IMG/VR virus record: IMGVR_UViG_3300010403_000705
Coordinates: 124,001 to 188,000 of that record
DNA length: 64,000 bases
Reading direction: 5' to 3' (one strand)
The translations under genes were made by a program, and so were the position numbers. Below, piece after piece: positions 2,727-17,853 of the stretch. The notes beneath the pieces were generated by a model, which was not told the DNA's origin, searched no databases, and was given only the letters and a program-made list of their open reading frames with translations. Positions within the stretch are counted from its first letter, which is position 1; each line of letters starts with the position of its first letter.

Positions 2727-5700
2727 ATGACATTTATTAAATTAGGTGAATTTATTGAAATTAACAGAGTAGAAAATACTGAATCTTGTATTCCTGCCGT
2801 TAGTGCTGAAGTATTAGAAAATTTTAAAAAAATTGCAATGAACTTAAAAAAAGTTGCTCCAAGAGCAGAAGATTTTTTATATTTTTCTGCAGTTATGATG
2901 CACGCCGCTGAAGCTTCTGGACTTAATGATGATGGCACGCCTAAATTAAATTCTAAAGGTGAAGAAGTTCAAGTTGGCTGGGATAAAAAAAATGGTACTT
3001 GGCGATGGACAACTAACGATCCTAATATTAGACCATATAAAAATTCTAATGGTGATATTTTTCCAGAGGAAGAATTAGTTAAAGCATATAAAAAATGGAT
3101 ACATAAGCCTTTATGTGTTGATCACAAATCTAGTTCAGTTGATCATACAAGAGGATTTATTGTTGATACATACTATGATAGGAATTTAAAAAGAGTTATT
3201 GCGTTATGCGCTTTAGATAAAGCTAATTATCCAGATTTAGCAAGAAAAATTTCAACAGGAATGCAAACTTGCGTATCTATGGGAACTGCTGTAGGACGAG
3301 CTATTTGTACAGAAGAAGGTTGTCATCGTGTAGCTCGTGCTGAATCAGATTTTTGTGAGCACATGAAGCGTAAGACATGCTATGGTGAAATTAACATTGA
3401 TTTAAATCCTATTGAATTATCAATTGTTGTTAATGGCGCTGATCCAAAAGCAAATATTAAGCACATTATCGCTTCTGCTCATACACTTAATAGTTATATT
3501 GAAACTAAACAAAAAGAACTTAATAAATTAGCAGAACAAGAATTTATAGCTAATTTAACATTCAATAATGATAGTGATAGTAATAATACAATAACTAATA
3601 TTAGTGTTAGGTCTGGTTCTTTGGATAGTTTTAAAAAAGATTTAGAAAAAGCTATTGATGATTATCAATCATTAAATTCTTCAATACAAGAAGAAAATAT
3701 TAATTTAGATACTAATGATCTTGCATTTAATCAATCATCTGGCACTGTTGCGATGGACGAATCTCAAATTTCTAACACTGATTCTGGATTAGCACCACCT
3801 CATGCAAGATATGCATCACAAAAGATATTAGATGCAAATTCTATTAAAGAATTACGTGAAATAACAGCCACCATTGAATATAAATTAAATTATATGAAAG
3901 ATAGTTTAAATAAGTTAGCAAATTCTATAAATATACACGAGGAAATCATGCCTTCAAAAGAAATAAATAAAAAGGGTTATTACCTAGGAACGGAAGAGCC
4001 CACCCCTGGTCAGCCTAAATATCCAGTAGATAAAGGTCACATGACTTATGAAGAGGATAAGCATTTACATGGTCAAAAACCATTTCCTGACACGGGTCCA
4101 ATAGATGGAATGCATCCTGGTGTAGAAAGCGCAGGCGTTTCTGAATTAGAACGTAAAAAAATGTTAGCTCGTGCTGAGGCAGAAGAAAGAGCAATCCGCC
4201 GCCAAGCAATAGTTAATCTTGCTAAACAAGCTTTAGAAGATAAAAAAGCACAAGCTTTAGAAGATAAAAAAGCTTATTACGGTAATGGAGATGAAAAAAA
4301 TCCTGGCTTCCCAACTCCCGGCAAACCTAAATATCCAGTAGATAAAGGTCACATGACTTATGAAGAGGATAAGCATTTACATGGTCAAAAACCATTTCCA
4401 GGTGTTGGCGCAGTAGATGGATTACATCCAAGTCCAGAATCAGCTGAAGTATCTGATGAGTTAAAACGTAAAGAATTACTGCATAGAGCAAATACACTAC
4501 ATGGTAGATTTGTAAGAGCAGCTAAGAATGATGGTACTAGAGACTTAGATAATAGTGCTTGGGAAATCCGCTTAGGTGATAAGTTATTGTTAACTGCATC
4601 TGTAAAAGATCTTTCTGGTGGACGATCAGAAATGATGTATGATAGTATCAATACTGCTGAATTTGGGCAAAGACTACTAGAAAAAGTAAAAGTATATGGA
4701 GCTGACAGAGTGCGTTCCTTGGTAAAAAGTGGTCAAGAAACACCGGCGCCTGCTGCACCTCCGGCTGATGCTGCTCCAGCCGTTCCGCCAGAAACAACAC
4801 CTCCAACTGAAACTCCTACCCCTAATGGAGAAGATACTGGTAAAAGTGGAGATCCAAAAGAATCAGCCATAGAATTATCTGAGAAAGTTAGAGATGTAAG
4901 TTCAGATTTAGTTGAAGCTGTAAGAGCTTTAACTGGTGAACAAGCCGAAATGGGTGCTGATATGGGTGCAGCACCTGAGATGGCAGCCACAGCTTCTGAT
5001 TTCAATACCGAACACATGAATGCTTTAAGAGGTGAACTTAATGAATCTCTTACAAGTGCTATGAAAGAAGTTATTGCAGAACTTAATGACCACCAACAAG
5101 AATTAGACATGATAGTTGGTATGTATGATAAGGGCGCAGTAGTTGCTTCAAATGAAGATTTTATTAATACTATTGTAAATGACGCTTTTAATGAAGCTAA
5201 AACTGCAGTTGCCAATGGTTTCAGATTAATGACTGCCTTTGTTAAATACGCTCGTGGCACCAAAGCCATTGTCAAACGTGCAGAAATAGAAGCAGAGCTA
5301 CAGGCATTAGCAGAGGGAGGAGATACTTCGATGAATTCAGAGATTGGTAGTGATGAAGATTTAATGAATCTTATACAAGATACAAATTCAGATTTAAATT
5401 CTGTCCAAGAATTAATGTTTGAGGACACAGATGATGATACAGGTACTGATTTAGAAGGTGGAGATGATTCATTAGAGTCTTTAGAAGAACAGTCGCTTGA
5501 GTTACCTGAAGAAGAACTTACAAATAGTGAAGATCCTCTTGATTTAGAATCTTTACCTACTGATGATAATGATTTAATGGCAAAACCAGAAGAATTAAAA
5601 GATCTACAAGTTAAACCAGGTACTACTGTTCAAATAACAGCAAACTTGCAAACAAAACAAGGACGCGCTGTCCTTCGTGCCAAATTAGCGGCAGATGCTT

Positions 5701-6407
5701 TAGGTAAACCAGATGACGGTCAACTTCAAGACATGTCGAAAGCTAAGTTTAGTGATATGCTAGATGAAGCAGATAGTTTAACCAATGGACAAATTAAAGG
5801 ATTAGACACTAAGCCTTCAGATAATATGGCTTATGTAGAAACTTTACCAGAAGTTAATAAAGCCATGATGGATCTAGCCAAGGCTCCACCAAAAGTACGT
5901 AAAGAGGCGGAAGCAATTCACAGATTAGTCAGCGAAGGCAAACTTGATCCATCAGATTTAGAAGCTTTAGTGGCAGAAGGTCTGGATAAAGATGCTGTGT
6001 CATACTATAAAAAATATTATGGACAAACTGATGGAGGTAGTGAATTTGCAAGTGAGTTAGTTAAAGAGCATGTAAAAGCTCAATTAGAGGATGAGTTAAA
6101 TAAATATAGAATTAAATTAGCTAGGGCTTATGAAGTAGCATATGATATGGTTGAACGCGGATTATGTCATAATGATAAAATAGCTATCTCTTCACAAGTA
6201 GATGAGATTATGAAATTTAACGATGATAGTTTTGATACTCTTAAAAGAGTTGTCGCAAGACATGCTCCTATATTACGTAAAGAAGCTGGACGTATGCCAC
6301 AAGTTGGAATAATTGGATCTGGTGAAAGTAACACATCAGTAACCCCAGAAGACGATTGGTCGCTATTATCAGCAGCATTTGCTAAGACTTCTACAAGGAT
6401 GTTTTAA
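2727..6407 (+). CDS. prohead (capsid maturation) serine protease fused to scaffolding protein
   Basis: N-terminal ~250 aa has clan-SH / HK97-type protease motifs PLCVDH, CVSMG and ELSIVVNGADPKA plus a C-x4-C...CEH insert; remainder acidic, helical, repeat-containing; upstream of capsid gene. Confidence 0.8.
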   Translation: MTFIKLGEFIEINRVENTESCIPAVSAEVLENFKKIAMNLKKVAPRAEDFLYFSAVMMHAAEASGLNDDGTPKLNSKGEEVQVGWDKKNGTWRWTTNDPNIRPYKNSNGDIFPEEELVKAYKKWIHKPLCVDHKSSSVDHTRGFIVDTYYDRNLKRVIALCALDKANYPDLARKISTGMQTCVSMGTAVGRAICTEEGCHRVARAESDFCEHMKRKTCYGEINIDLNPIELSIVVNGADPKANIKHIIASAHTLNSYIETKQKELNKLAEQEFIANLTFNNDSDSNNTITNISVRSGSLDSFKKDLEKAIDDYQSLNSSIQEENINLDTNDLAFNQSSGTVAMDESQISNTDSGLAPPHARYASQKILDANSIKELREITATIEYKLNYMKDSLNKLANSINIHEEIMPSKEINKKGYYLGTEEPTPGQPKYPVDKGHMTYEEDKHLHGQKPFPDTGPIDGMHPGVESAGVSELERKKMLARAEAEERAIRRQAIVNLAKQALEDKKAQALEDKKAYYGNGDEKNPGFPTPGKPKYPVDKGHMTYEEDKHLHGQKPFPGVGAVDGLHPSPESAEVSDELKRKELLHRANTLHGRFVRAAKNDGTRDLDNSAWEIRLGDKLLLTASVKDLSGGRSEMMYDSINTAEFGQRLLEKVKVYGADRVRSLVKSGQETPAPAAPPADAAPAVPPETTPPTETPTPNGEDTGKSGDPKESAIELSEKVRDVSSDLVEAVRALTGEQAEMGADMGAAPEMAATASDFNTEHMNALRGELNESLTSAMKEVIAELNDHQQELDMIVGMYDKGAVVASNEDFINTIVNDAFNEAKTAVANGFRLMTAFVKYARGTKAIVKRAEIEAELQALAEGGDTSMNSEIGSDEDLMNLIQDTNSDLNSVQELMFEDTDDDTGTDLEGGDDSLESLEEQSLELPEEELTNSEDPLDLESLPTDDNDLMAKPEELKDLQVKPGTTVQITANLQTKQGRAVLRAKLAADALGKPDDGQLQDMSKAKFSDMLDEADSLTNGQIKGLDTKPSDNMAYVETLPEVNKAMMDLAKAPPKVRKEAEAIHRLVSEGKLDPSDLEALVAEGLDKDAVSYYKKYYGQTDGGSEFASELVKEHVKAQLEDELNKYRIKLARAYEVAYDMVERGLCHNDKIAISSQVDEIMKFNDDSFDTLKRVVARHAPILRKEAGRMPQVGIIGSGESNTSVTPEDDWSLLSAAFAKTSTRMF
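3948..6407 (+). CDS. putative nested in-frame scaffolding protein (819 aa) from internal Met408
   Basis: GAGGA 3939-3943 then AATC then in-frame ATG 3948; repeat region starts just after this Met. Confidence 0.5.
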   Translation: MPSKEINKKGYYLGTEEPTPGQPKYPVDKGHMTYEEDKHLHGQKPFPDTGPIDGMHPGVESAGVSELERKKMLARAEAEERAIRRQAIVNLAKQALEDKKAQALEDKKAYYGNGDEKNPGFPTPGKPKYPVDKGHMTYEEDKHLHGQKPFPGVGAVDGLHPSPESAEVSDELKRKELLHRANTLHGRFVRAAKNDGTRDLDNSAWEIRLGDKLLLTASVKDLSGGRSEMMYDSINTAEFGQRLLEKVKVYGADRVRSLVKSGQETPAPAAPPADAAPAVPPETTPPTETPTPNGEDTGKSGDPKESAIELSEKVRDVSSDLVEAVRALTGEQAEMGADMGAAPEMAATASDFNTEHMNALRGELNESLTSAMKEVIAELNDHQQELDMIVGMYDKGAVVASNEDFINTIVNDAFNEAKTAVANGFRLMTAFVKYARGTKAIVKRAEIEAELQALAEGGDTSMNSEIGSDEDLMNLIQDTNSDLNSVQELMFEDTDDDTGTDLEGGDDSLESLEEQSLELPEEELTNSEDPLDLESLPTDDNDLMAKPEELKDLQVKPGTTVQITANLQTKQGRAVLRAKLAADALGKPDDGQLQDMSKAKFSDMLDEADSLTNGQIKGLDTKPSDNMAYVETLPEVNKAMMDLAKAPPKVRKEAEAIHRLVSEGKLDPSDLEALVAEGLDKDAVSYYKKYYGQTDGGSEFASELVKEHVKAQLEDELNKYRIKLARAYEVAYDMVERGLCHNDKIAISSQVDEIMKFNDDSFDTLKRVVARHAPILRKEAGRMPQVGIIGSGESNTSVTPEDDWSLLSAAFAKTSTRMF
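4014..4399 (+). repeat. 74-bp perfect direct repeat (4014-4087 and 4326-4399)
   Basis: Both copies read cctaaatatccagtagataaaggtcacatgacttatgaagaggataagcatttacatggtcaaaaaccatttcc (PKYPVDKGHMTYEEDKHLHGQKPFP). Confidence 0.97.
4226..4273 (+). repeat. 24-bp perfect tandem duplication
   Basis: acaagctttagaagataaaaaagc x2, encoding QALEDKKA twice. Confidence 0.95.
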
Positions 6408-6424: not shown

Positions 6425-7129
6425 ATGAGAAATAAAAGTGTATCAGATTTTGTCGCTGCCTCTATGGATGCAGTATTAAAGAGTGCGACACACCAATCTA
6501 TGTTTAACAACACATATAAATTTGCATCACAGCAATGTGAAAAATGTCATAAAACTATGGAAGAATGTTCATGTGATAGTAATAGCGCAGATGATAATGA
6601 TGTGAAAAAGAATTCAGATTCATCTAGTGATAGTAGCTCTAGTGATTCTAGCAGTGCTTTTGATGGCATACTAGATACAAATGACGTATCAGATAAAGAA
6701 GAAGATTGCACTGAAGAAATGGAATCATCTGCTCTTGATGTAGCAATAGATAGTTTACTTACAGCGTCCGCTGCTCTCGATCGTGCAGGATTAGAAAGAG
6801 GATCTTCTCTCAGTTTGAAACTAGCATCATTGGTAGTAGAAGCTAAGAAAAAAGAAGATAGCAAAAAGAAAGATTCTAAAAAAAGTAACAGTGATTCTAA
6901 AAAGAAAAGCGATTCTAATGATGCTAGAGCCAAGAAAAAGAAAGAAGAAGATATGAAGAAAAAGAAGGAAGAAGCGGCAAAAGCTAAGAAATTAAAAGAT
7001 TCTAATGACGCTAGAGCCAAGAAAAAGAAAGAAGAAGATTCTAAAAAATCTTCCTCAAGATCATCTTCATCGTCCTCTAGTTCCAGCTCTAGTAAAAGAC
7101 CTAATCCATTTCTAAAAAAAAGTAAATAG
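6425..7129 (+). CDS. low-complexity acidic/basic head-region protein
   Basis: 234 aa; Ser/Asp-rich middle, helical AALDRAGL motif, Lys/Ser-rich tail; AAGGA SD. Confidence 0.7.
   Translation: MRNKSVSDFVAASMDAVLKSATHQSMFNNTYKFASQQCEKCHKTMEECSCDSNSADDNDVKKNSDSSSDSSSSDSSSAFDGILDTNDVSDKEEDCTEEMESSALDVAIDSLLTASAALDRAGLERGSSLSLKLASLVVEAKKKEDSKKKDSKKSNSDSKKKSDSNDARAKKKKEEDMKKKKEEAAKAKKLKDSNDARAKKKKEEDSKKSSSRSSSSSSSSSSSKRPNPFLKKSK
6911..7039 (+). repeat. 42-bp direct repeat (6911-6952, 6998-7039), one mismatch
   Basis: gattctaatga(t/c)gctagagccaagaaaaagaaagaagaagat = DSNDARAKKKKEED twice. Confidence 0.9.
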
Positions 7130-7173
7130 TACTAGTTAAAAATATTGTTAAGTTTTTATAATGGATAAATTAT

Positions 7174-7395
7174 ATGTTTAAAATTAGCAGCTCCGAAGAA
7201 GAACTTTATCGTTCTATGCAAAATAAAATGTGTTCTAACCAATTAGAAAATAAATACAGTTTTGATAAAATTTCTAGAGCTGCTGATTATCTAAATTCTG
7301 CTGCTTCAATTTTTGATCAAGCTGGAATGAAAAAAGAAGCAGCAGAAATAACTGAAGTATTATCAGATTTAGCTAAACAAATATCTTCTAAGTAA
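7174..7395 (+). CDS. small helical protein, paralog of the N-terminus of 7403..8059
   Basis: 73 aa; RAADYLNSAASIFDQAGMKKEA vs KAADYINSAIEIFEDMGMYKHA. Confidence 0.8.
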   Translation: MFKISSSEEELYRSMQNKMCSNQLENKYSFDKISRAADYLNSAASIFDQAGMKKEAAEITEVLSDLAKQISSK

Positions 7396-7402
7396 GGCAA
7401 TA

Positions 7403-8059
7403 ATGATTAAAAAAAGTGTATTTGAAAATGAGTTAATTACTGGTATGCACAATCAGTTACTGAAGCAAGCCAAGCATCAAGATGATGAGCATCTTGAAAA
7501 GGCGGCAGATTATATTAATTCAGCAATTGAAATTTTTGAAGATATGGGTATGTATAAGCATGCTGATAAATTATTATATATATTAACCAAAATTGCCACT
7601 CATGATACTAAGGTTAAAAAATTGCCCTCCGAAGAAGCCTTAAAAGAAGAGGGAGCATCATATAATGATTTTGGTGCCATGAAATATAGTACATATGCTA
7701 AGGCTAAAGTTAATAATGCGCTTAGAAGATTAGGGTATACTGATAGAGAAATTAAAGAGCTAATTGGTGACCATAATTTTATTTCTTTCGAGGAACAAGA
7801 AAAATTACTAGACATGCCGCCATCATTTAAAGTCAGATTGCAGAATATCAGAGAAAATGTAAGAGCTTCTCATTTATCAGATCGTCATACAAAAGGATTA
7901 ACATCTGAAAAAATGATATCAAATTTAAAAGACCATGGTACAGTCTTCAATTTATCTGATGATGGTAAAATAGGAGATTTAGATATTGGTGAAGATACAT
8001 TAGAAGTATCTGATAATACTATTACTGAAATTCAAGATTTTGAAGATGAAATAGATTAA
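7403..8059 (+). CDS. putative internal head protein
   Basis: 218 aa; N-terminal ~65 aa paralogous to 7174..7395; acidic C-terminus. Confidence 0.65.
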   Translation: MIKKSVFENELITGMHNQLLKQAKHQDDEHLEKAADYINSAIEIFEDMGMYKHADKLLYILTKIATHDTKVKKLPSEEALKEEGASYNDFGAMKYSTYAKAKVNNALRRLGYTDREIKELIGDHNFISFEEQEKLLDMPPSFKVRLQNIRENVRASHLSDRHTKGLTSEKMISNLKDHGTVFNLSDDGKIGDLDIGEDTLEVSDNTITEIQDFEDEID

Positions 8060-8113: not shown

Positions 8114-8803
8114 ATGCTTAGATTAGTACAAGTTGGAAACACATTACCTGGTAGTTTTATCGTCGATCCTTCGGCAGAATTTCAACCTGGACAAATTGCT
8201 GAATTAACTGTTTTAGGAAACCAAGTAATGGTAACAGTGAGTAATGGAACTGCACCACTTGGCATCATTGATGATATTAAAACTAGAGCATTTACTAATG
8301 TATCTTGGAACGAGGAAGTACGAGTTCCTGCAGTTGGTGTACCTGGACCTAACAATGTTTTAGTAACTCCTATTGATATTAAAGCTGAATTAAGAAGACC
8401 TAATATAATACGTTCTAGTTTTTCTTCTACTATTAAAGCAGAATTAAATCCCGTTAATGGTGTTATTACTTTTTTAGCAGGTACACCTCTTAACATCGAT
8501 TTAATAGGTGCGGGTCAACCTAATGGCATTAAAGCTATTGTTAATTACACATATCAAGTAGCAAATATCCCAGGTGATGATAGTACACAAGGATCTGGTA
8601 GAGTTACTGTATGGTTTAATAGAATGTTTTTTCAAACCGATCAATATGAGACTAATCAACAATATCCTGTCAAAGCTAATTTATATGTTAGTGAAGTTGG
8701 ATTTTTAACTACTAGAAGACCTAGTACTATACATCCCGCAGTTGCTATGGTAACTGCACCACCTACTCCAATTAATCCCATGATAGAATGTCTTTGGTAC
8801 TAG
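8114..8803 (+). CDS. capsid decoration/cement-like protein, paralog 1
   Basis: 229 aa, beta-rich; MLRLVQVG and GSGRVTVW match MALKLLQPG and GSGKVTLW of the gene directly upstream of the capsid gene. Confidence 0.55.
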   Translation: MLRLVQVGNTLPGSFIVDPSAEFQPGQIAELTVLGNQVMVTVSNGTAPLGIIDDIKTRAFTNVSWNEEVRVPAVGVPGPNNVLVTPIDIKAELRRPNIIRSSFSSTIKAELNPVNGVITFLAGTPLNIDLIGAGQPNGIKAIVNYTYQVANIPGDDSTQGSGRVTVWFNRMFFQTDQYETNQQYPVKANLYVSEVGFLTTRRPSTIHPAVAMVTAPPTPINPMIECLWY

Positions 8804-8840
8804 AGGTAAAAGTTGATATATATAGTAGTGTGGAGAAATT

Positions 8841-9547: not shown

Positions 9548-9703
9548 AGTTTATAAATGTTTGAGATGTGATTCACTAATATCTCTGGCTGAGTGGAATA
9601 AAATTTATAGATTTTCTATTATCACACAATATATTTTATTAATTAGTTATACTGCATATATTTTCATATAATATAGATTATACTATATATTTGAGGCTTA
9701 CCT

Positions 9704-10810
9704 ATGACTTTTAAGCATATAAAATTTGAAGATTCCTCTACAATGCGTTCTTTAGAAAAAGTAGCGCGAGATAAAGGTTGGATTAGTAACACACCAATAT
9801 CTAAAATTGCCTCTATAAGTAAAGTTGATTTATCAATCTCAACTAATTTAACAGAAAATATTATGAAACTATGTGCGGGATTGAGATCATCCGGATTAGA
9901 TAAATATGCAAATGAAGTTGAGTCAAAATTCATGAATTATAAAAAAGCTCAAACTTTGTATGAAACATCAAAAGAAGTTGGTGAGGATCTAATTGATAAC
10001 GCTCATCCTAAAGGATCTCATAAGTTAAGTGGTATTGAAGGTGATAATATTATTGAAACTATTATTGATCAACATCTTGCAACTATTAAATTAACAGAAA
10101 AAAAACCAACTGGTAAACTATCTTCTCAAGATATTTTGCGATCAGTTAAAATAGTACTTTCACAAGCTGCTAGCAACCCTACTATTGTACAAGCTCTTAC
10201 TTCAGCGTTAAATGCCATGAAGACTATATTCAGTCTTCATAGCGAGCAATCTTTTTTAACACGTCCAATTGCATGGGGCGAAGATACATTGATAGAAAAT
10301 ATTAATTATGCTTTAAACAATACACATGATGTAAATGTACTAGAGAGAATTTATCCTAAAATTAAATTAGGTGTAGACAATTTTTATCTTGCCTACAAAC
10401 CAGGTACTGTTATTGGAGGTTCTAGCGCAGAAGTGTGGGCAGGTATGTTACCACTGTTTAATAAAGTATATGCTGCATTAACTACTATAAAACAAACAAT
10501 GGAAAATTCAAATAGTAAGATTCAACCAAAAACTTCAGTAGATGTATTAACTCAATGGTTACATAATGCTAATTCTACCTTAAAAGGTTTTCAAGCTAAG
10601 ATAAGTACAGATCCAGATCTAACTGAAAGTGAGAAACAAGAAGCTAGCACTTGGATAGTTAAAAAGATGAATAATGTCGCTAATGTAGAATCTCAGTTTC
10701 AATCTATGGACGATGACGAGAAAATACAAAATGCTGAATTACTATTATCTAATTTAAAAAAAATAACAACTCCTAGTTTCGGACAATTTAAAAAAGCATG
10801 GATAGATTAA
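9704..10810 (+). CDS. putative internal head/ejection protein, paralogous N-terminus with 14653..15888
   Basis: 368 aa; SLEKVARDKGWI, LYE...DLIDNAHP, KKPTGKL align by eye with FFKIAQEQGLI, LYG...NIIEDAHP, KVPNGHL. Confidence 0.55.
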   Translation: MTFKHIKFEDSSTMRSLEKVARDKGWISNTPISKIASISKVDLSISTNLTENIMKLCAGLRSSGLDKYANEVESKFMNYKKAQTLYETSKEVGEDLIDNAHPKGSHKLSGIEGDNIIETIIDQHLATIKLTEKKPTGKLSSQDILRSVKIVLSQAASNPTIVQALTSALNAMKTIFSLHSEQSFLTRPIAWGEDTLIENINYALNNTHDVNVLERIYPKIKLGVDNFYLAYKPGTVIGGSSAEVWAGMLPLFNKVYAALTTIKQTMENSNSKIQPKTSVDVLTQWLHNANSTLKGFQAKISTDPDLTESEKQEASTWIVKKMNNVANVESQFQSMDDDEKIQNAELLLSNLKKITTPSFGQFKKAWID

Positions 10811-10818
10811 AAGGGTTT

Positions 10819-11973
10819 ATGTCTGATAAATTAAATTTAATTAAAAAATACGCACAACAAACTGAAGATATACCTATTCCAACTAGAAAATCTCCTAAAA
10901 CTAAACAAGTCTCACAACAGAATGTAGATTCCAATATACCAGTAGCAAAAAAAATGGGACCAACTATTAAGGAACGTCTTCAAAATATAGTACCAGGATT
11001 TGCTTCCAAAAAAAATGCGCCAGGTAACTCTGCGCAGCAAATGGCAGATGCTATTAGTGCAGTTAAAGAAATGCAAACTGCAATGCAAAACTTAGCACAA
11101 ACAGTAATTACAGATGCGGAGTCTGGCACTATGGCATATAAACCAAAAGATGCCACTCAACCAGGAGCTAGTGATGAAGTAAAAACATCTAAAAAAAGTT
11201 TTAATGATTTTATTGCTGAGCAATATTTAGGTGGTTTAGACGAAGATAAGAAAGGTGTAGAATGGACCAAAGATACGCATGTAGTAACTTTACCAGGCAA
11301 GCAAAAAACACAAACAGACATTTATGAATTAGATGTTGTTATGGATACTTTGCGTAGAGTAGGTGCAAGTACTAAAGAATTTACAGTAGACGGTAAATGG
11401 GATTTTAGAACAGATAATGCATTAAGAAATATAATGGGTTTTGCTTATGCTTTATTACAATTAGAAGGTGATTTTGGACTAGAAAATAATATTTATACTT
11501 TTGATCACTGGAAAAATTTTAATAAAGCTTTATCTGAGTATAAAATAGAAAATGGAATAGTAAAACTTTCAGCGGCACATAAAATAACAAGAGCCAACGC
11601 TATCACTAAACATTTGAGAGCAATTAGTAAATTATATAATCATTTTAGACAACAAGTATTGGCTAGACCAGAATTTAGACCCACTATAGAAGGAAAAAGA
11701 CCTTTTGATAGGTATACGACACAAGGTTCTAATAAAAATGTTTTAACAGCACCAGAGGAACAAATGTCAAAATCAGATGCTATCAAAATTCCGCTTAACA
11801 CACCTTATTCTGCGCCTAATTTACCTAATAAAAAATTAGATTATATTCCAATTAAAGCACTACTTAATAGAAGCGAGTACATAAAATGGATGGTTAATTA
11901 CGCTGGTAATACAGAAGTTGCTGCTATGGATATTTTCAATAAAATTATAAAACCTAAAATTGAATTAATGTGA
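10819..11973 (+). CDS. putative internal head protein
   Basis: Track ORF 10798..11973; ATG 10819 after AAGGG preferred; begins MSDKLNLIKKYAQQ. Confidence 0.55.
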   Translation: MSDKLNLIKKYAQQTEDIPIPTRKSPKTKQVSQQNVDSNIPVAKKMGPTIKERLQNIVPGFASKKNAPGNSAQQMADAISAVKEMQTAMQNLAQTVITDAESGTMAYKPKDATQPGASDEVKTSKKSFNDFIAEQYLGGLDEDKKGVEWTKDTHVVTLPGKQKTQTDIYELDVVMDTLRRVGASTKEFTVDGKWDFRTDNALRNIMGFAYALLQLEGDFGLENNIYTFDHWKNFNKALSEYKIENGIVKLSAAHKITRANAITKHLRAISKLYNHFRQQVLARPEFRPTIEGKRPFDRYTTQGSNKNVLTAPEEQMSKSDAIKIPLNTPYSAPNLPNKKLDYIPIKALLNRSEYIKWMVNYAGNTEVAAMDIFNKIIKPKIELM

Positions 11974-11981
11974 AGGATACT

Positions 11982-13517
11982 ATGTCTTTTTTATATGATT
12001 TATATAATGAGTCTATGAATGATTTTCTTTTTAAAAAAACTGCTCAAAACATACCACCTATATCTCCTAATGAAGTTGCTAAAAAATTAGTTAGTAGACT
12101 AGAAAGAGAAATATCGGGTATACCAGAATCATTAAATATTTCTTCTGAAAATTCTAGTTCTGTTGATTTAGGAGTTAATCAATTACAAAATTTAGGAAAA
12201 TTACTTCAGTTCATGTCAGCTAATAAAATAAAAGTTGATAATATAAGAGTAGTATTTCCAGAGGCTGAAGCTAGTTCTTTACCAGAAGAAGAAAGACATA
12301 AACTATCTCCTGTTAGTGTCAATATGTCTAGAGATGCTGTTAGTAGAAAATGGAACACTGCCGATTTTTACACAAATCTTCCTTTATTAATAAAATATGT
12401 TACTTATCTACAAAATAAAGCTCAGGAATTAAAAAGAAATGGGGATGTCCAGGGCAGAATATTAGAAGTAATGATTGGTAAATTAATAGATTCTGTAAAT
12501 AATATCAAACCTGATTCTGGACTTTCTAGATCTCCTAAATCTAAACCAGATTTGCCTAATGAAATGCCGCAAGAAACAGTGGTAGATAATTTCGGAACAA
12601 AAATTTTCGACATTAATAATCCATATACTGATAAAGGACCACTAGTTCTAACTGGTAAAGATTTATTTAGCAAAGAATCTTTAAATGCTTGGATGAAACA
12701 GGCTCCAGAAGCACAAATTTTAGATGGACAATCATCAATAAAATTTACGGATCCTTCAGCGAATCATTGTAATATAATTAATGTGTTACACAAACGTGCT
12801 TCTAATTTAGTTAGAATTTCTTCTTCACCAGAAGATACAAAAAAATATAATTTTTATTTGAATAAGATAACCCAATTAGGACCCGCATTTACAGATCCTC
12901 AAGGGAAAGCTTGTAGTATTGGAGGGTCAACTTCACCTTCAGCAGGTCTATATAATAAACATAATTTTTTGGGACAGCCGGGGGGAGATGGTACTGGTGG
13001 TACTGGCATTTCTACACAAATTCTAGAACAACTTGTTCAAAGCCTTCCTCTTGATCCGCAAGATATAGATTTTAATCGTATTAGAAACTTTTTTAATTTA
13101 TATACTAGAGTAACATCTAGTGATAATGCACAATCTGCTATTACTTCTATGGGAACCGCTTTATATGCTATGACCACTGTTTCTGGATTAACACTAACAG
13201 GAAACCAACAAAATTTTAGGATAACTAGAAACGTACAAGAATTAATTACATGGTTAAAATCACCTGCCGGTAATAATGCTCTTCAATTTTTATATGCATT
13301 ACAGCAAATTATAACAGAGACTGGTAAAGTATTAAGAATGTTCTATAATGAATTTGTTAGAACTACTTATTCTGGAGATAGACAAACTTTAAATAGTGAG
13401 CAAAAAGCTTTAGTAGAGTCACAGATTCTGGGAGCTAATTCTATTTACTCGCAAAACCTTAGAGATATACAATCTTTAATAGCAAATTTTAAAAATACTG
13501 TGAGTACACAAAAATGA
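11982..13517 (+). CDS. putative internal head protein
   Basis: Track ORF 11970..13517; AAGGA SD then ATG 11982; FKKTAQ near the N-terminus. Confidence 0.55.
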   Translation: MSFLYDLYNESMNDFLFKKTAQNIPPISPNEVAKKLVSRLEREISGIPESLNISSENSSSVDLGVNQLQNLGKLLQFMSANKIKVDNIRVVFPEAEASSLPEEERHKLSPVSVNMSRDAVSRKWNTADFYTNLPLLIKYVTYLQNKAQELKRNGDVQGRILEVMIGKLIDSVNNIKPDSGLSRSPKSKPDLPNEMPQETVVDNFGTKIFDINNPYTDKGPLVLTGKDLFSKESLNAWMKQAPEAQILDGQSSIKFTDPSANHCNIINVLHKRASNLVRISSSPEDTKKYNFYLNKITQLGPAFTDPQGKACSIGGSTSPSAGLYNKHNFLGQPGGDGTGGTGISTQILEQLVQSLPLDPQDIDFNRIRNFFNLYTRVTSSDNAQSAITSMGTALYAMTTVSGLTLTGNQQNFRITRNVQELITWLKSPAGNNALQFLYALQQIITETGKVLRMFYNEFVRTTYSGDRQTLNSEQKALVESQILGANSIYSQNLRDIQSLIANFKNTVSTQK

Positions 13518-14599
13518 AGCGAAACTGTAATAGTGAAATAGATTTTTATGTAGATAGTATTATAGTAGAAACTATTTTAAGAGATGAAAAAATAACTAAA
13601 TATGCTGATACGACTAGTAGCGGATTAGTATTATCATTAATTGATAAAGTTAAAAATTATGTAAGTAATCATATTGATCCTGACGATAAGTCTGGCAGTC
13701 TTATTAGCATATTAGGACCTGGTGCTATATCAGTTGCTTTTAGCGCCATGGGACTGAGTTGGTTAGGCACGTTAATTGGTTTAGCTATGAGAGTATTTAA
13801 TATTAATGTAAAAGACATTATCAGTTCTATTTGGGACAAACTTAAATCTGCGATAGCTGGAGATAAACCAGTATCTTCCGCACAAGTAGATTCTTTTGTT
13901 CAAAGTGCGATACAAGAACATTCTCAGCCAGCTACACAAGAAGAAGCAGAAAAAGCTGCAAAAAATATGGAAAGCAAATCATTTTCAAAACTTGTTAGAG
14001 ATGCACAATTTGTTAAGTTAGCTATGATAAATTATGAAAATGATTCTTTTAGAAAAGAAGCTGGATTTTTTGAAATGTTCAGTAGCAGAAAATCTAAAAC
14101 TGTTTCGATTTTAACAAGAGTGCTTAGTTGGATTTTTAAGATTGCTCTAGCATCTGCTGGGCTCATGGTAGCAGGAGATGTTGTAAACAAATTTGTAGGT
14201 AGACCTAATGCCATTGATAATACTATTCAAAAAGGTAAGCCTATTGAACAACCCATAGTTCCCGCTAATATATCTAAACAAAAAAAATTTTTAGTTAAAC
14301 CTACCTATAATGCTAACGAAAAATACAACACCAGAGATTCTAATTGGATAGAAAGAATATCTAATGATCCATCTTCTATTGAAAACATGTTAATATCTTT
14401 TGTTAAAGAAGTATATGAAGGATTAAACGGCAAAGAGAATATTATTAAAAGCTCACCAGCTTTTCAAATGGTTAAAAATAGAATTATTTGGTATAATCAT
14501 ACTAGTCCTAATTCACCTATGATATGGATTCCAAAATATTTTTCTTCCAAAAAACAAATTGTCGATTATTTCATTGATGATGTAGCAGAAAGGGCATAA
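13514..14599 (+). CDS. putative internal/ejection protein with hydrophobic helices
   Basis: 361 aa; TKYAD and RKEAG motifs, each upstream of an apolar segment (GSLISILGPGAISVAFSAMGLSWLGTLIGLAM; VLSWIFKIALASAGLMVAG). Confidence 0.55.
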   Translation: MKRNCNSEIDFYVDSIIVETILRDEKITKYADTTSSGLVLSLIDKVKNYVSNHIDPDDKSGSLISILGPGAISVAFSAMGLSWLGTLIGLAMRVFNINVKDIISSIWDKLKSAIAGDKPVSSAQVDSFVQSAIQEHSQPATQEEAEKAAKNMESKSFSKLVRDAQFVKLAMINYENDSFRKEAGFFEMFSSRKSKTVSILTRVLSWIFKIALASAGLMVAGDVVNKFVGRPNAIDNTIQKGKPIEQPIVPANISKQKKFLVKPTYNANEKYNTRDSNWIERISNDPSSIENMLISFVKEVYEGLNGKENIIKSSPAFQMVKNRIIWYNHTSPNSPMIWIPKYFSSKKQIVDYFIDDVAERA

Positions 14600-14652
14600 T
14601 AAAATTGTGCATATGCTGACATATCTTTGTAATTTTGCCTGTGAGATAATCA

Positions 14653-15888
14653 ATGAATAAACGTAGAAGCGATGTTTTAGATAATTTCTTTAAAATAGCA
14701 CAAGAACAAGGTTTAATTTCAAATAAAAATACAACAGAAAAAACTAAACGAAAATTAGAAAAAACACACCGAGCTGATTCGTTAAGTGCCAAAGATATTG
14801 AAGAACTTTATGGAATCAAACCAGAAATGTCTAAAGGTAATCAATATACAAGAAATATTATTGAAGACGCTCATCCTACATCATATATCGCTGCTCCTTC
14901 ATATGATAAACTAAATGGTTTAGTGGAAAACGAAAATGAAAGACAAGATATTACATTACATATTTTAAATAAAGTTCCTAATGGACATCTGACTGGTCAT
15001 AAATATGCTGCAAAAGATTTAATATTATCACTAGTAAGAGTGGGTAATGATTTAGATCATAAAAATAATGATCGATTACGAATATTAGCAGATACTTGTT
15101 TGCTACAAGTTAGCCAACCAATGAAAAAAAATGCAGCTGCCGTATTGATAGCAATTCCGGTATTACTTGGATCCTTATATCTGCAACAACATTTATCATT
15201 CGTTAATGAAGGGTTTGAAAAAAATCATCAAAAAATAATTGCTGAAATAGACGATTTATTACAATCTAGTTCTTCGTGGGGAATAGGATATGATTATAAA
15301 TCAGATTTCAAAAATATGGTGCAAGATTTTAAAACTAAACTAATGAATTTTTATACACTATATAAAAAAATAGAACCTATAATTACTGATTTAGAAAAAC
15401 CAAGAACAGCAAAAGATTTAATAGAATTATCAAAACAACCACAAACAGATACAGTGGTAAAAGCTTACGGTGCCCTTAAATCCGCAGCAGACAATATGTT
15501 ACCTTATATTATTACTATTGAAAAAAACTTTGCTTCAGAAACTTATAAAACTAGACAAATAGAAGATAAAGGATTTATGTCTTCTCTAGTTGATAATCTA
15601 CAAGTTTTTCATGGAGGAAAAGGACTAGTAGCTGATGATTTTGAGGATATTGTAAGAGCTATTGATCCATACAAAAAATCTATAAATGATTTAGTTAATA
15701 TATTAAAAAATGCTGAATCTATTGAGAAATCAGCACAGCAGAAAATACAGGAAGCATCTGCATCAGAAACAAATACTCCTAATGAATTTGATTCTACAAC
15801 TCAAAAAGTTGAACCAACAATGGAAAAATCAGATGTTGATCAACAAGTGGAAGATTTAGAAAAAGATCTTGCCGGTGGACTATTATAA
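14653..15888 (+). CDS. putative internal/ejection protein
   Basis: 411 aa; N-terminus paralogous to 9704..10810; KKNA followed directly by hydrophobic AAVLIAIPVLLGSLYL. Confidence 0.55.
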   Translation: MNKRRSDVLDNFFKIAQEQGLISNKNTTEKTKRKLEKTHRADSLSAKDIEELYGIKPEMSKGNQYTRNIIEDAHPTSYIAAPSYDKLNGLVENENERQDITLHILNKVPNGHLTGHKYAAKDLILSLVRVGNDLDHKNNDRLRILADTCLLQVSQPMKKNAAAVLIAIPVLLGSLYLQQHLSFVNEGFEKNHQKIIAEIDDLLQSSSSWGIGYDYKSDFKNMVQDFKTKLMNFYTLYKKIEPIITDLEKPRTAKDLIELSKQPQTDTVVKAYGALKSAADNMLPYIITIEKNFASETYKTRQIEDKGFMSSLVDNLQVFHGGKGLVADDFEDIVRAIDPYKKSINDLVNILKNAESIEKSAQQKIQEASASETNTPNEFDSTTQKVEPTMEKSDVDQQVEDLEKDLAGGLL

Positions 15889-16026: not shown

Positions 16027-16725
16027 ATGGCTTTAAAATTATTACAACCAGGCGTACAACCTTTAGGTCAGTATGATGGTCTCGATACAGAATTTTTAAC
16101 ATTAAAAGGTGGAGAAATTGTTAGTTTCACTTCAGTTCCTGTTTCTGGATCTGATAAAGCGGCTAGAGACGTACTTGATGGATATGTAAATCCAGGTTCT
16201 GTTCAAAAAAGAGTAGCAGTAACCAGAAACGTTCCCACTACAAAAAGACCTCTTATGTTATCTGATGATGGTATTACTGGATATGGAACTTTATTTGGTT
16301 CCATAATTGGTGGTAGTTTAGGTGGACAAGTAGTTGGAGTTACTATAGGACCACACACTTCTTTAGGTTCAGGTAAAGTAACATTATGGGAAAAACCTGG
16401 TATCTATGCTGTATCTTTAGATGCATGTGATACATCATCTACTGATGGATTACAGCCTACTAATACAACTTTAGATACAGGAGCGGCATTAACTTGGGTT
16501 CCAGCTAGTACTTCTGGGGGTCGGCTAACTCCAGTTGGTAGTGCAGCGGCTGCTGGTAACACAGTGGTTGTGGGTCGCTTTATTGATTTTGAAAGTAATG
16601 GTTCTCTTGTTACTACTCCAAGTAGTTTAGTAGCGGCACTTAATGCACCAGATGGCACATTAGGGGGAGCACTTCCAAAACAATTTGCTTTTGCTACTTT
16701 CTATTTTAATCCTCCATCTGCTTAA
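16027..16725 (+). CDS. capsid decoration/cement-like protein, paralog 2
   Basis: 232 aa, Gly/Thr/Val-rich, immediately upstream of the major capsid gene (position of lambda gpD-type genes). Confidence 0.7.
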   Translation: MALKLLQPGVQPLGQYDGLDTEFLTLKGGEIVSFTSVPVSGSDKAARDVLDGYVNPGSVQKRVAVTRNVPTTKRPLMLSDDGITGYGTLFGSIIGGSLGGQVVGVTIGPHTSLGSGKVTLWEKPGIYAVSLDACDTSSTDGLQPTNTTLDTGAALTWVPASTSGGRLTPVGSAAAAGNTVVVGRFIDFESNGSLVTTPSSLVAALNAPDGTLGGALPKQFAFATFYFNPPSA

Positions 16726-16737
16726 TTAATTTATATT

Positions 16738-16822
16738 CTAGCCGAGGGGCTGGAATAATTCTCTTCGGGGAAACCCCTCAACTTTTAATAATGTTTAGCT
16801 GGTAAAACTGGCAAAAATTCCA
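16738..16822 (+). ncRNA. candidate structured cis-regulatory RNA in the capsid gene leader
   Basis: GC-rich island with gagggg/cccctc stem, cUUCGg hairpin, alternative GGG-GAAA-CCC hairpin and further stems with G-U pairs, ending just before the AGGAG SD. Confidence 0.55.
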
Positions 16823-16839: not shown

Positions 16840-17853
16840 ATGAATATGTTCAATAATCAAAACACAATGAACGCCTCCTCTTTAAAAGATATGTTGCAAC
16901 AACTAGTAAAATATGCAGCAGTTTTAGAAGAGAATCAACCAGCCAATATGGGTCTAGCTGGTCAAGTTTCATTAAGTGATGATAAAAGAGATGAGTTAAT
17001 TTCACGTGCTATTGTTACTCAAGATGGTAAAATTGCTTTAGCACAAGCTATGGCAAATCCAATTAGAAGAAACTTAGATTATCATGGTATTGCACGACGT
17101 GCACTTGTTGTAGATCCTTTACCTCAAGCAGCTACACCAAGTTACGATAGAGATATTGATGTCGCAGCTGTTGTTATTTCATCCAATGGTACTGGACCAG
17201 AATCTAGGGTGTTTGGTGATAGAGTAGTTGTTCCTACATTTGAAATATATGCAAATCCTACTGTTAGAATTTCTGAAGTAAGACGTCGTAGATTTAATGT
17301 TATTGATAGAGCTGTACAAAAAGCCCGTCAAGAAATTATGGCTCAAGAAGATGCAAATATCTTTGCAGCTATGGATGCCGCTGCTTCAGTAGAAAATACT
17401 TTAACTGATATTGCAGATGCAGGTCTTCTAAAAAGAGATCTTGTAGAAATAAAACAACAAATTGATCGTTGGGATTTAGTAACCACTAAATATTTTATGA
17501 ATATCAATGAATTCACTGATATGCTAAAATGGGGTTCCGGTGGTGGTCAAGGTGTTGGCGGTGGAGATTTTGATCCTGTGACTATGAGAGAAGTATTACA
17601 AACTGGTTTATATGCTCATATTTGGGGTACAGATATTATGGTAAGTAAAATTGTACCACCAGGCACAATTTATGGAGCAGCAGATCCTGAATTCGTGGGA
17701 GTAATGCCAATTAGACAAGATATCGAAGTTCTTCCTGCAGACGAACCAAAACAACTAAAACTTGGTTGGGTAGTTTCAGAAGAAATTGGAATCGGAATTG
17801 TAAATCCAAGAGGCGTCGCTGCCGGTAGAAAGAGTGTTGTTCTAGGCGCTTAA
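16840..17853 (+). CDS. major capsid protein (HK97-like fold)
   Basis: 337 aa; strong SD; downstream of protease/scaffold and decoration genes, followed by a terminator; LVVDPLPQ E-loop-like segment and terminal GWVVSEEIGIGIVNPRGV strand typical of HK97-fold capsids. Confidence 0.88.
   Translation: MNMFNNQNTMNASSLKDMLQQLVKYAAVLEENQPANMGLAGQVSLSDDKRDELISRAIVTQDGKIALAQAMANPIRRNLDYHGIARRALVVDPLPQAATPSYDRDIDVAAVVISSNGTGPESRVFGDRVVVPTFEIYANPTVRISEVRRRRFNVIDRAVQKARQEIMAQEDANIFAAMDAAASVENTLTDIADAGLLKRDLVEIKQQIDRWDLVTTKYFMNINEFTDMLKWGSGGGQGVGGGDFDPVTMREVLQTGLYAHIWGTDIMVSKIVPPGTIYGAADPEFVGVMPIRQDIEVLPADEPKQLKLGWVVSEEIGIGIVNPRGVAAGRKSVVLGA

What the first reader, a model, noticed from the sequence alone, without database searches (positions are those of the whole stretch)
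9704..15888. Five-gene block of 360-515-aa proteins with a duplicated leader and hydrophobic helices behind K-x-A motifs
Seen: 9704 and 14653 share a ~140-aa N-terminal region (KxA..xG.I; LY...I..AHP; K.P.G.L) then diverge. In 14653 KKNA is followed directly by AAVLIAIPVLLGSLYL; in 13514 both KYA and KEA precede apolar segments. Inference: ejection proteins whose membrane-inserting helices are exposed by maturation cleavage and form a trans-envelope DNA conduit, functionally like T7 gp14-16 but in a myovirus.
Basis: inference. Interest (0 to 1): 0.62.

Follow-up and report, generated by a model that had tools for sequence, protein, structure and literature searches.

The report
Protease-tagged internal head proteins, megaphage
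Five fast-evolving genes between the head protease and the capsid gene of an uncultured 433-kb contractile-tailed phage all carry the short N-terminal tag that the capsid protein and the protease carry; two also have conserved membrane-type helices behind internal copies of it, so they are most likely protease-processed proteins packed inside the head, some acting on membranes after ejection.

Summary
The window is part of a 432,844-bp phage-G-like myovirus. The five ORFs lie between a 1226-aa prohead-protease fusion protein and the major capsid protein, in an order conserved in every relative fetched.

- **Shared N-terminus.** The products of 9704 and 14653 share a remote but real N-terminal domain (profile-profile probability 89%, E 2e-6; controls below 1%).
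- **Shared tag.** All five start with a short helix ending in hydrophobic-x-K-x-A/G. The capsid protein and the protease have the same tag. It is conserved in 10 of 14 genes of this module against 14 of 268 elsewhere (p 2e-9).
- **Internal copies.** These sit in low-confidence linkers of the AlphaFold models. In the 14653 product, 92% of 120 homologues keep one directly before a conserved hydrophobic helix. The 13514 product has two conserved hydrophobic segments.
- **No relatives of known function.** No Pfam, PHROG, PDB or fold match was found, and no homologue in 50,697 GenBank phages, phage G included.

Best reading: protease-processed internal head proteins, like T4 internal proteins or phiKZ ejection proteins, with a new motif and new families. 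Two probably become membrane-active. Cleavage, presence in virions and a T7-like conduit are untested, and nothing resembles T7 gp14-16.

The parts
2727..6407 (+). 1226-aa protein. Residues about 35-250 are the prohead (head maturation) protease. The roughly 950-aa C-terminal extension is probably scaffold-like.
   Evidence: phrog_18299 head maturation protease E 1.2e-11. 34% identity to phage G gp19. NF045541 protease part E 1.5e-7, far below its curated cut-off. Two tandem leader motifs at A37 and A44 are kept in relatives. Further conserved motifs lie at 669, 804, 842, 852, 1061, 1090 and 1187.
6425..8059 (+). Three small head-module ORFs (234, 73 and 218 aa). The 234- and 218-aa products carry N-terminal copies of the leader motif.
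   Evidence: The 73-aa product and the N-terminus of the 218-aa product cross-hit in tblastn.
8114..8803 (+). Conserved 229-aa protein without the motif, directly upstream of the block. Function unknown.
   Evidence: 72-89% identical in relatives. No family hit. Not similar to the 232-aa protein at 16027.
9704..10810 (+). P1, 368 aa. Leader helix ends at A21, with further conserved motifs at A36 and A69. The N-terminal domain is paralogous to that of P5. The helical C-terminal part is divergent. No hydrophobic segment.
   Evidence: 338 homologues, all unnamed.
9734..10129 (+). P1 residues 11-142: the region aligned to P5 residues 6-117.
   Evidence: hhalign probability 89%, E 2.2e-6.
10819..11973 (+). 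P2, 384 aa from the likely start (the ORF opens at 10798). A 12-aa leader ends in K-Y-A, then a Pro-rich linker, then a basic body (pI 9.3).
11982..13517 (+). P3, 511 aa from the likely start (the ORF opens at 11970). A 21-aa leader ends in K-T-A, then a linker, then a large body of unknown fold.
13514..14599 (+). P4, 361 aa. Leader to A31, hydrophobic region 1, amphipathic helices, a linker with motifs at A170 and A183, hydrophobic region 2, and a C-terminal globular domain.
   Evidence: AlphaFold mean pLDDT is 80, low at 27-33, 163-182 and 230-236.
13697..13801 (+). P4 residues 62-96: conserved Gly/Ala-rich hydrophobic region 1.
   Evidence: KD19 is 1.79 in the window and the family median is 1.65.
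14048..14062 (+). P4 residues 179-183: internal motif F-R-K-E-A.
   Evidence: Kept in 73% of 121 sequences. Lies in a segment with pLDDT below 50.
14102..14185 (+). P4 residues 197-224: conserved small-residue-rich hydrophobic region 2.
   Evidence: KD19 is 1.76 in the window and the family median is 1.79, with 98% of members at or above 1.6.
14653..15888 (+). P5, 411 aa. Leader to A16, N-domain, internal motif at A161, hydrophobic helix, four-helix-bundle C-domain, acidic tail.
   Evidence: The family has 566 clusters at 50% identity.
14668..15003 (+). P5 residues 6-117: the N-terminal domain shared with P1.
15121..15135 (+). P5 residues 157-161: internal motif M-K-K-N-A.
   Evidence: Kept in 92% of 120 homologues. 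K159 is invariant in 65 sequences.
15136..15192 (+). P5 residues 162-180: hydrophobic helix.
   Evidence: KD19 is 1.71 in the window and the family median is 2.03. pLDDT is below 50, so it is not packed into the model. Distant members have a Gly-rich hydrophobic stretch at the same place.
16027..16725 (+). 232-aa protein in the position of the phage G capsid decoration protein. No motif.
   Evidence: Position relative to phage G gp26 and gp27. 55-79% identical in relatives.
16840..17853 (+). Major capsid protein, 337 aa, with a 26-aa leader ending in K-Y-A.
   Evidence: phrog_2522 E 8e-76. 53% identity to phage G gp27, which lacks the first 40 or so residues. The leader is conserved.
16734..16757 (+). 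Terminator-like hairpin, the first on the + strand after the block.
   Evidence: There is none inside 9704-15888, which suggests co-transcription.
39603..42377 (+). Tail sheath protein, showing a contractile tail.
   Evidence: phrog_2839 E 2e-10 and phrog_23.

Best explanation
The five genes encode internal head (prohead-core) proteins of a phage-G-like megaphage.

**Proposed mechanism**
1. Each protein begins with a 12-31-residue helix ending in hydrophobic-x-K-x-A/G. The capsid protein and the prohead protease have the same ending.
2. This leader most likely does two jobs: it brings the protein into the assembling prohead, and it marks where the prohead protease cuts. That is the logic of the T4 capsid-targeting sequence.
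3. P2 and P3 would lose only the leader and stay in the head as large basic proteins.
4. P1 would be trimmed at two or three sites near its N-terminus.
5. P4 and P5 would also be cut at internal copies of the motif that lie in flexible linkers. P5 would give a fragment of about 250 aa that begins with a hydrophobic helix. P4 would give two fragments, each holding a Gly/Ala-rich hydrophobic segment.
6. These pieces would be stored in the head and leave with the DNA. The hydrophobic ones would insert into the host cytoplasmic membrane, to help the genome cross it or to act on the membrane.

**Shown here**
- Gene position and conserved gene order.
- The motif, its conservation and its enrichment in the head module.
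- The shared P1/P5 N-terminal domain.
- Conserved hydrophobic segments.
- Motif sites falling in low-confidence linkers of the models.

**Inferred only**
- Cleavage at the motif.
- Packaging in the head.
- Ejection.
- Membrane insertion.
For: **Context**
- The protease is at 2727-6407 and the capsid protein at 16840.
- The same gene order is found in all related loci.
- There is no + strand terminator-like hairpin inside the block.

**Motif**
- All five proteins, the capsid protein and the protease have it at residues 12-44.
- Conservation in deep families is 76-98% at the leader sites and 92% at P5 A161.
- K14 and K159 of P5 and K29 of P4 are invariant in 65-sequence alignments.
- 10 of 14 module genes carry it against 14 of 268 elsewhere, p 2.2e-9.
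- The protease's C-terminal extension carries seven more conserved copies.
- Motif sites coincide with pLDDT below 50 in both models.

**Other**
- The block evolves far faster than the capsid protein: 23-70% against 87-95% identity. This is usual for internal, scaffold or ejected proteins.
- Hydrophobic segments are conserved, even in distant P5 relatives whose C-termini differ.
- P2, P3 and P4 are basic, pI 8.7-9.4.
Against: - No virion proteomics or N-terminal data exist. No cultured phage has a homologue.
- The scissile bond is unknown, and the motif could be a binding element rather than a cut site.
- The motif was defined after the fact.
- P4's hydrophobic segments are modelled with high confidence, so they may be part of a stable soluble fold.
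- About 11% of this genome's ORFs reach the same hydrophobicity threshold.
- Fold searches gave only generic helical matches.
- The one complex prediction (protease domain with the P5 leader) gave no verdict and counts neither way.
Confidence: 0.5

Rival explanations
1. The processed proteins assemble into a channel that spans the host envelope and carries the DNA, as T7 gp14, gp15 and gp16 do, but in a myovirus.
For: - This shares all the evidence for head-internal, processed proteins.
- P4 and P5 have conserved Gly/Ala-rich hydrophobic helices of a kind common in channel formers.
- A genome of about 430 kb has to cross the inner membrane somehow.
- There are weak structural echoes of membrane proteins and alpha-pore-forming toxins: TAP Z 6.8; AhlB 8.3; AhlC 7.7; YaxB 7.4; NheA 7.2; cyanophage A4 pre-ejectosome chain 5.6. 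All are below the level expected by chance for helical models.
Against: - There is no sequence or fold similarity to T7 or P22 ejection proteins and no lytic transglycosylase domain.
- Only two of the five proteins have hydrophobic segments.
- The phage has a contractile tail. By established knowledge of T4-type infection, the tail tube itself crosses the outer layers.
- A tail-module protein at 54565-56748 has a much stronger hydrophobic segment, KD19 3.35, and could serve membrane passage.
Confidence: 0.17
2. They are scaffold or core proteins. They build the inside of the very large prohead, are cut by the protease, and leave before or during DNA packaging, so they are absent from the mature virion.
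For: - The position is right for scaffolds: upstream of the capsid gene, downstream of the protease.
- They are mostly helical, evolve fast, and carry the protease motif.
Against: - P2 and P3 have only one conserved site, at the leader, so they would stay as 42- and 54-kDa bodies rather than be broken into small peptides.
- Scaffolds do not normally carry conserved membrane-type helices.
- The protease's own 950-aa extension, with seven conserved motifs, is a better scaffold candidate.
Confidence: 0.2
3. P4 and P5 are membrane-anchored assembly factors that start or hold prohead assembly at the host inner membrane, in the manner of T4 gp40 with the portal. They are not packaged.
For: - They have conserved hydrophobic segments flanked by Lys residues, as in ordinary membrane anchors.
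- They sit in the head module.
Against: - This does not explain why soluble P1-P3 and the capsid protein share the same leader.
- It does not explain why a motif copy sits exactly at the start of the P5 helix in 92% of homologues.
Confidence: 0.08
4. The block is not head-related, for example lysis or other membrane functions lodged in the head module as the endolysin genes are in phage G, and the motif is a coincidence of composition.
For: - In phage G, endolysin genes lie between the protease and the capsid gene.
- The genome is AT-rich and Lys is common.
Against: - Motif enrichment has p 2e-9, with conservation across orthologues only 25-70% identical.
- The sizes (361-515 aa) and architectures do not resemble holins or spanins.
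- There is no endolysin or other enzyme domain.
Confidence: 0.05

Closest known systems
T4 internal proteins and prohead core proteins (IPI, IPII, IPIII, Alt, gp67, gp68), processed by the gp21 protease
   Same: A myovirus. A set of non-essential-looking, fast-evolving proteins carries a short N-terminal targeting leader. The leader ends in the same short motif at which the capsid protein is cut, and the mature proteins are stored in the head and injected. This rests on established knowledge and on the review PMC9026906.
   Different: The T4 motif is L/I-x-E and here it is hydrophobic-x-K-x-A/G. There is no sequence similarity. The proteins here are 3-5 times larger, two have membrane-type helices and internal motif copies, and the protease here is fused to a 950-aa extension.
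Inner-body and ejection proteins of phiKZ-like giant phages (phiKZ, 201phi2-1, SPN3US), processed by gp175 or gp245
   Same: Giant myoviruses whose heads hold many protease-processed proteins, some of them paralogous, which are ejected into the host. The cut sites follow a short motif (PMC5694885, PMC7411985, PMC10052503).
   Different: The motif there is (S/A/G)-x-E. No homology was found. Membrane-type helices placed behind cut sites are, to my knowledge, not a described feature there.
T7 gp14, gp15 and gp16, and P22 gp7, gp20 and gp16 ejection proteins
   Same: Head-stored proteins that leave before the DNA and insert in the host envelope. Some have hydrophobic segments.
   Different: Those are podoviruses with no tail long enough to span the envelope. 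No sequence or fold match was found and there is no transglycosylase domain. The T7 core proteins are, by my knowledge, not processed by a prohead protease.
Head module of Bacillus phage G (portal gp14, protease gp19, decoration gp26, capsid gp27)
   Same: The capsid protein is 53% identical and the protease about 34%. The gene order from protease to decoration to capsid is the same (PMC12484599).
   Different: Phage G has no homologue of any of the five proteins by HMM search. Its capsid protein lacks the 26-aa leader. Endolysin genes occupy the interval instead.
Soluble-to-membrane alpha-helical pore formers (ClyA, AhlB, YaxB and NheA family)
   Same: P5's C-domain is a long four-helix bundle next to a hydrophobic helix. 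Four family members appear among the top 50 structural matches.
   Different: Z is 7.2-8.3, below what unrelated helical bundles reach, and there is no sequence signal. This is a lead only.

Membership tests
Protease-processed internal head proteins (T4 internal-protein / capsid-targeting-sequence type) | Encoded in the head morphogenesis module, co-oriented with the protease and capsid genes | tested here: met
   The block lies between the protease (2727) and the capsid gene (16840), and the order is conserved in all relatives.
Protease-processed internal head proteins (T4 internal-protein / capsid-targeting-sequence type) | A short N-terminal leader ends in the same motif that precedes the mature capsid protein | tested here: met
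   Hydrophobic-x-K-x-A/G lies at residues 12-31 of all five proteins, at A26 of the capsid protein, and at A37 and A44 of the protease. Enrichment p is 2.2e-9.
Protease-processed internal head proteins (T4 internal-protein / capsid-targeting-sequence type) | Actual cleavage by the prohead protease, and presence of the mature form in virions | not testable with these tools
   There is no cultured relative. The complex prediction gave no verdict.
Protease-processed internal head proteins (T4 internal-protein / capsid-targeting-sequence type) | Sequence homology to T4 or phiKZ internal proteins, or use of their motif (L/I-x-E; A/S/G-x-E) | tested here: not met
   No PHROG or Pfam hit. The motif is different.
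T7-type ejection / core proteins (gp14, gp15, gp16) | Sequence or fold similarity to gp14, gp15 or gp16; a lytic transglycosylase domain in the gp16 counterpart | tested here: not met
   Pfam, PHROGs, NCBIfam and PDB sequence and fold searches show none. P1-P3 were not folded.
T7-type ejection / core proteins (gp14, gp15, gp16) | Short non-contractile tail that needs an extension built from ejected proteins | tested here: not met
   A tail sheath gene lies at 39603-42377.
T7-type ejection / core proteins (gp14, gp15, gp16) | Forms a trans-envelope channel after ejection | not testable with these tools
   Only hydrophobic segments can be shown.
Integral membrane / membrane-inserting proteins (P4 and P5 only) | At least one conserved segment of about 19 residues with Kyte-Doolittle mean of 1.6 or more | tested here: met
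   P5 family median 2.03; P4 segment 2 median 1.79; P4 segment 1 median 1.65, which is borderline.
Integral membrane / membrane-inserting proteins (P4 and P5 only) | The segment is not buried in a soluble fold | tested here: inconclusive
   The P5 helix is unpacked, pLDDT below 50. The P4 segments are modelled with pLDDT 85-95. Coordinates could not be inspected.
Phage scaffolding proteins | Helical, upstream of the capsid gene, removed or degraded at maturation | tested here: inconclusive
   Position and helicity fit. P2 and P3 have a single conserved site, which argues against degradation. Removal cannot be tested.
HK97-type prohead protease (for the upstream 2727 gene) | Match to a prohead protease model over the catalytic domain | tested here: met
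   phrog_18299 E 1.2e-11. NF045541 positions 52-159 E 1.5e-7, but at 30 bits against a curated cut-off of 525 for the whole fusion model. 34% identity to phage G gp19. Pfam gave no protease family.

The most novel reading that the evidence does not exclude
In this megaphage clade, capsid maturation doubles as an arming step. The prohead protease cuts P5, and probably P4, exactly in front of a Gly/Ala-rich hydrophobic helix. The head then stores fragments with a free membrane-inserting N-terminus, much as viral fusion proteins are primed by cleavage. On ejection through a contractile tail these fragments assemble in the host inner membrane into the channel that lets a genome of more than 430 kb in. 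That would be a head-borne, protease-primed membrane-entry device in a myovirus, using a previously undescribed cleavage motif (hydrophobic-x-K-x-A/G).
Probability: 0.18. Interest if true: 0.75.

Novelty: new variant of a known kind. Interest (0 to 1): 0.5.

Why it matters
How giant phages build and load heads that hold 400-500 kb, and how such genomes cross the host membrane, is largely unknown. The only cultured megaphage, phage G, has none of these genes.

What the finding offers:
- The leader motif gives a simple, testable rule for predicting the head-internal proteome of a widespread uncultured clade. The P5 family alone has 566 clusters at 50% identity.
- The motif already flags further candidates elsewhere in the genome.
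- If cleavage at the motif is real, it defines a new specificity for a prohead protease.
- If the hydrophobic fragments insert into membranes, it would be a case of protease-primed membrane-active cargo in a contractile-tailed phage.

If instead the proteins are scaffolds, the finding is an ordinary though unannotated head-assembly module.

Tried and rejected
**Searches that found nothing useful**
- Pfam, PHROGs and NCBIfam on all five proteins gave no credible hit.
- PDB sequence-profile searches for four of the families gave nothing below E 0.01. The DotI hit for P2 (E 0.018, 17 bits) aligns a generic helix and was dropped.
- I suspected a peptidoglycan-binding motif in P2 (D-G-x-W-D-x-x-T). 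No member hits PG_binding families, so it was rejected.
- Foldseek against PDB and BFVD, VIA-align wide and the ESM Atlas, for the P4 and P5 models, returned only orthologues or generic helical matches.
- blastn and tblastn against 50,697 GenBank phages found no match for the block, P4 or P5.
- HMMs of all five families against the phage G head region found nothing.

**Tests of the shared P1/P5 N-terminus that failed before the deep profiles**
- BLASTP and a single-family HMM fail to link them.
- Shallow profiles gave only 13% probability.

**Other**
- The complex prediction of the protease domain (44-262) with the P5 leader (1-40) scored 0.01 against a mark of 0.32: no verdict, and evidence in neither direction.
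- The 229-aa and 232-aa proteins flanking the block are not detectably related.
- The promoter scan was not above shuffled background.

**Not used or not met**
- No alternative genetic code was needed.

Full report
**What the window is**

The window is bases 124001-188000 of a single 432,844-bp IMG/VR virus record with 33% G+C.
- The ORF at 16840-17853 is the major capsid protein: phrog_2522, E 8e-76, 53% identical to gp27 of Bacillus phage G.
- The ORF at 39603-42377 is a tail sheath, so this is a phage-G-like megaphage with a contractile tail.
- The 1226-aa ORF at 2727-6407 carries a prohead protease domain at residues about 35-250. Evidence: phrog_18299 E 1.2e-11; 34% identity to phage G gp19; the protease part of NF045541 at E 1.5e-7.

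The five genes of the finding fill most of the space between this protease and the capsid gene. A 229-aa protein lies before them, and a 232-aa protein lies after them in the position of the phage G decoration protein.

**The observation**

The five ORFs are as described. Ortholog N-termini, SD-like sequences and an independent gene call put the real starts of genes 2 and 3 at 10819 and 11982. I call the products P1 to P5.

The claimed N-terminal similarity of P1 and P5:
- It is invisible to BLASTP.
- It is invisible to an HMM of 120 P5 homologues searched against all ORFs of the genome.
- It is weak with shallow profiles: 13% probability.
- With 120 homologues on each side, hhalign gives 89% probability and E 2.2e-6 over P1 11-142 and P5 6-117. 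The same test against the P4 family gives 0.07% and 0.8%.

So the duplication is real but old.

The hydrophobic helices are also real.
- P5 residues 162-180 follow K-N-A directly.
- P4 has two hydrophobic regions, at about 62-96 and 197-224. They start about 30 and 13 residues after K-Y-A and K-E-A.

**Conservation and relatives**

Gene order in relatives:
- Every related locus keeps the same order: protease fusion, three small ORFs, the 229-aa protein, P1 to P5, the 232-aa protein, capsid. These loci came from viral contigs and metagenome assemblies, mostly contigs of 200-490 kb.
- One relative is a complete 451,956-bp genome with terminal repeats.
- The capsid protein stays 87-95% identical while P1-P5 fall to 23-70%.

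Family sizes and distribution:
- P5 has more than 388 homologues by word search and 566 clusters at 50% identity by exhaustive profile search. P4 has 232 homologues and P1 has 338. All are unnamed.
- None occurs in 50,697 GenBank phage records or in the head region of phage G.

**The shared leader motif**

All five proteins begin with a short helix ending in hydrophobic-x-K-x-A.

| Protein | Motif ends at |
|---|---|
| P1 | A21 |
| P2 | A12 (from the likely start) |
| P3 | A21 (from the likely start) |
| P4 | A31 |
| P5 | A16 |
| Capsid protein | A26 |
| Protease | A37 and A44 (tandem) |

The 234- and 218-aa small proteins carry it too.

Conservation:
- In the deep families the strict motif is kept at 76-98% of leader sites.
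- The Lys is invariant in the 65-sequence alignments: K14 and K159 of P5, K29 of P4.
- In P2 and P3 the motif is followed by Gln and a Pro-rich linker.

Genome-wide control. I compared the genome with the complete relative.
- Of 282 orthologous pairs whose alignment reaches the N-terminus, 24 have a conserved motif in the first 60 residues.
- 10 of the 14 genes from protease to capsid have it, against 14 of 268 elsewhere. Odds ratio 45, Fisher p 2.2e-9.
- The motif was defined from these proteins, so this p-value is not fully independent.
- Its presence on the capsid protein and on the protease itself, the two classic substrates of a prohead protease, is the stronger argument.
- Phage G's capsid protein starts about 40 residues later and lacks the leader.

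**Internal motif copies and structure**

Conserved internal copies:
- P1 A36 (94%) and A69 (76%).
- P4 A170 (62%) and A183 (73%).
- P5 A161 (92%).
- Seven sites in the protease's C-terminal extension.

AlphaFold models from 65-sequence alignments:

| Protein | Mean pLDDT | Confident parts | Low-confidence parts |
|---|---|---|---|
| P5 | 73.5 | four-helix bundle, 185-370 | hydrophobic helix and the motif before it (157-182), below 50 |
| P4 | 80.2 | 40-155, 185-225, 255-361 | 27-33, 163-182 and 230-236; the first two hold the motifs |

So the motif copies outside folded domains lie in predicted flexible linkers, where a protease could reach them.

Hydrophobic segments in the families:
- The median best 19-residue Kyte-Doolittle value is 2.03 for P5, 1.65 for P4 region 1 and 1.79 for P4 region 2.
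- Distant P5 relatives that share only the N-domain still have a motif near residue 150-165, followed by a Gly-rich hydrophobic stretch.

Fold searches returned only orthologues from uncultured Caudovirales or generic helical matches. The best were Z 6.8 for P4 and 9.9 for P5, both below the level that helical models reach by chance.

**Interpretation**

The best-supported reading is that these are internal head proteins, targeted and processed through a common leader. This is the logic known from T4 internal proteins and from the ejection proteins of phiKZ-like phages (PMC9026906, PMC5694885, PMC7411985, PMC10052503). Here the motif and the protein families are new.
- P2 and P3 have one conserved site each, so they would persist as 42- and 54-kDa basic proteins. 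This fits stored cargo better than a scaffold that is degraded.
- The protease's own extension, with its many sites, is the better scaffold candidate.
- Cutting P5 at A161 would leave a 28-kDa acidic fragment that starts with the hydrophobic helix.
- Cutting P4 at A31 and at A170 or A183 would give two fragments, each with one hydrophobic region.
- That arrangement, kept over hundreds of diverged homologues, is the most interesting feature. It suggests that maturation primes membrane-active cargo.

All of cleavage, packaging, ejection and membrane insertion are inferences.

The general idea, processed head proteins with helices exposed by cleavage, is compatible with everything found. The T7 gp14-16 analogy has no direct support.
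- There is no homology and no transglycosylase domain.
- Only two of the five proteins are hydrophobic.
- The phage has a contractile tail.
- A tail-module protein at 54565-56748 has a far stronger hydrophobic segment.

I give the conduit version about 0.17, the broader processed-internal-protein reading 0.5, scaffold-only 0.2, membrane-anchored assembly factors 0.08, and an unrelated function 0.05.

**Limits**
- Model coordinates could not be inspected, so whether P4's hydrophobic helices are buried is open.
- P1-P3 were not folded.
- The single complex prediction gave no verdict.

Noticed in passing
window 8803-9700 (ORFs 8918-9193 and 9317-9547): The gap between the 229-aa gene and P1 is a hotspot for homing endonucleases. 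Relatives carry a full GIY-YIG gene (231-257 aa), a LAGLIDADG/HTH gene, a DUF723-like gene, or nothing there. The window has two short ORFs that match pieces of the GIY-YIG type, so it is probably a split or decaying copy.
   Followed up: partly
L019:12181-16876: In one relative (a 442-kb ENA contig) no full-length capsid gene was called where the others have it. That interval holds several short ORFs and three LAGLIDADG_2 ORFs, which suggests introns or inteins in the capsid gene. The pieces were not checked against the capsid protein.
   Followed up: no
window 2727-6407: The prohead protease is fused to a C-terminal region of about 950 aa with at least seven conserved copies of the hydrophobic-x-K/R-x-A/G motif. 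This may be a self-processing protease-scaffold polyprotein.
   Followed up: partly
G000:C1:53698-54231, 225745-226239, 107779-108234, 116553-117206, 239699-240409 (outside the window): Other genes of the same genome keep the same kind of N-terminal leader in the complete relative. The first has the leader, then Gln and a Pro-rich linker, just as in P2 and P3. They are candidates for further head-internal proteins encoded away from the head module.
   Followed up: partly
window 54565-56748: A 727-aa protein in the tail region has the most hydrophobic 19-residue segment of the whole genome (Kyte-Doolittle 3.35). It has no PHROG hit and may be a membrane-penetrating tail or tape-measure-like component.
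   Followed up: no
window 1071-1802: A tyrosine / dual-specificity phosphatase gene (Y_phosphatase2, E 8e-13) lies just upstream of the head protease gene. It may be a packaged or early effector.
   Followed up: no
P0285 (homologue of the 9704 product): One homologue sits on a 26.8-kb NCBI contig binned as Candidatus Berkiella sp., a Legionellales bacterium that lives in amoebae. This is either a host hint or a binning artefact. BFVD orthologues come from 'uncultured Caudovirales phage' records.
   Followed up: no
window 7174-7395 and 7403-8059: The 73-aa protein and the N-terminus of the 218-aa protein hit the same places in relatives, so they are paralogues. The middle of the 218-aa protein is missing in several relatives.
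   Followed up: no
window 10798-10819 and 11970-11982: The longest ORFs of genes 2 and 3 overlap the preceding genes. Ortholog N-termini and SD-like AAGGG and GAAGGA sequences point to starts at 10819 and 11982, each leaving 8-nt gaps. P3 and P4 overlap by 4 nt.
   Followed up: yes
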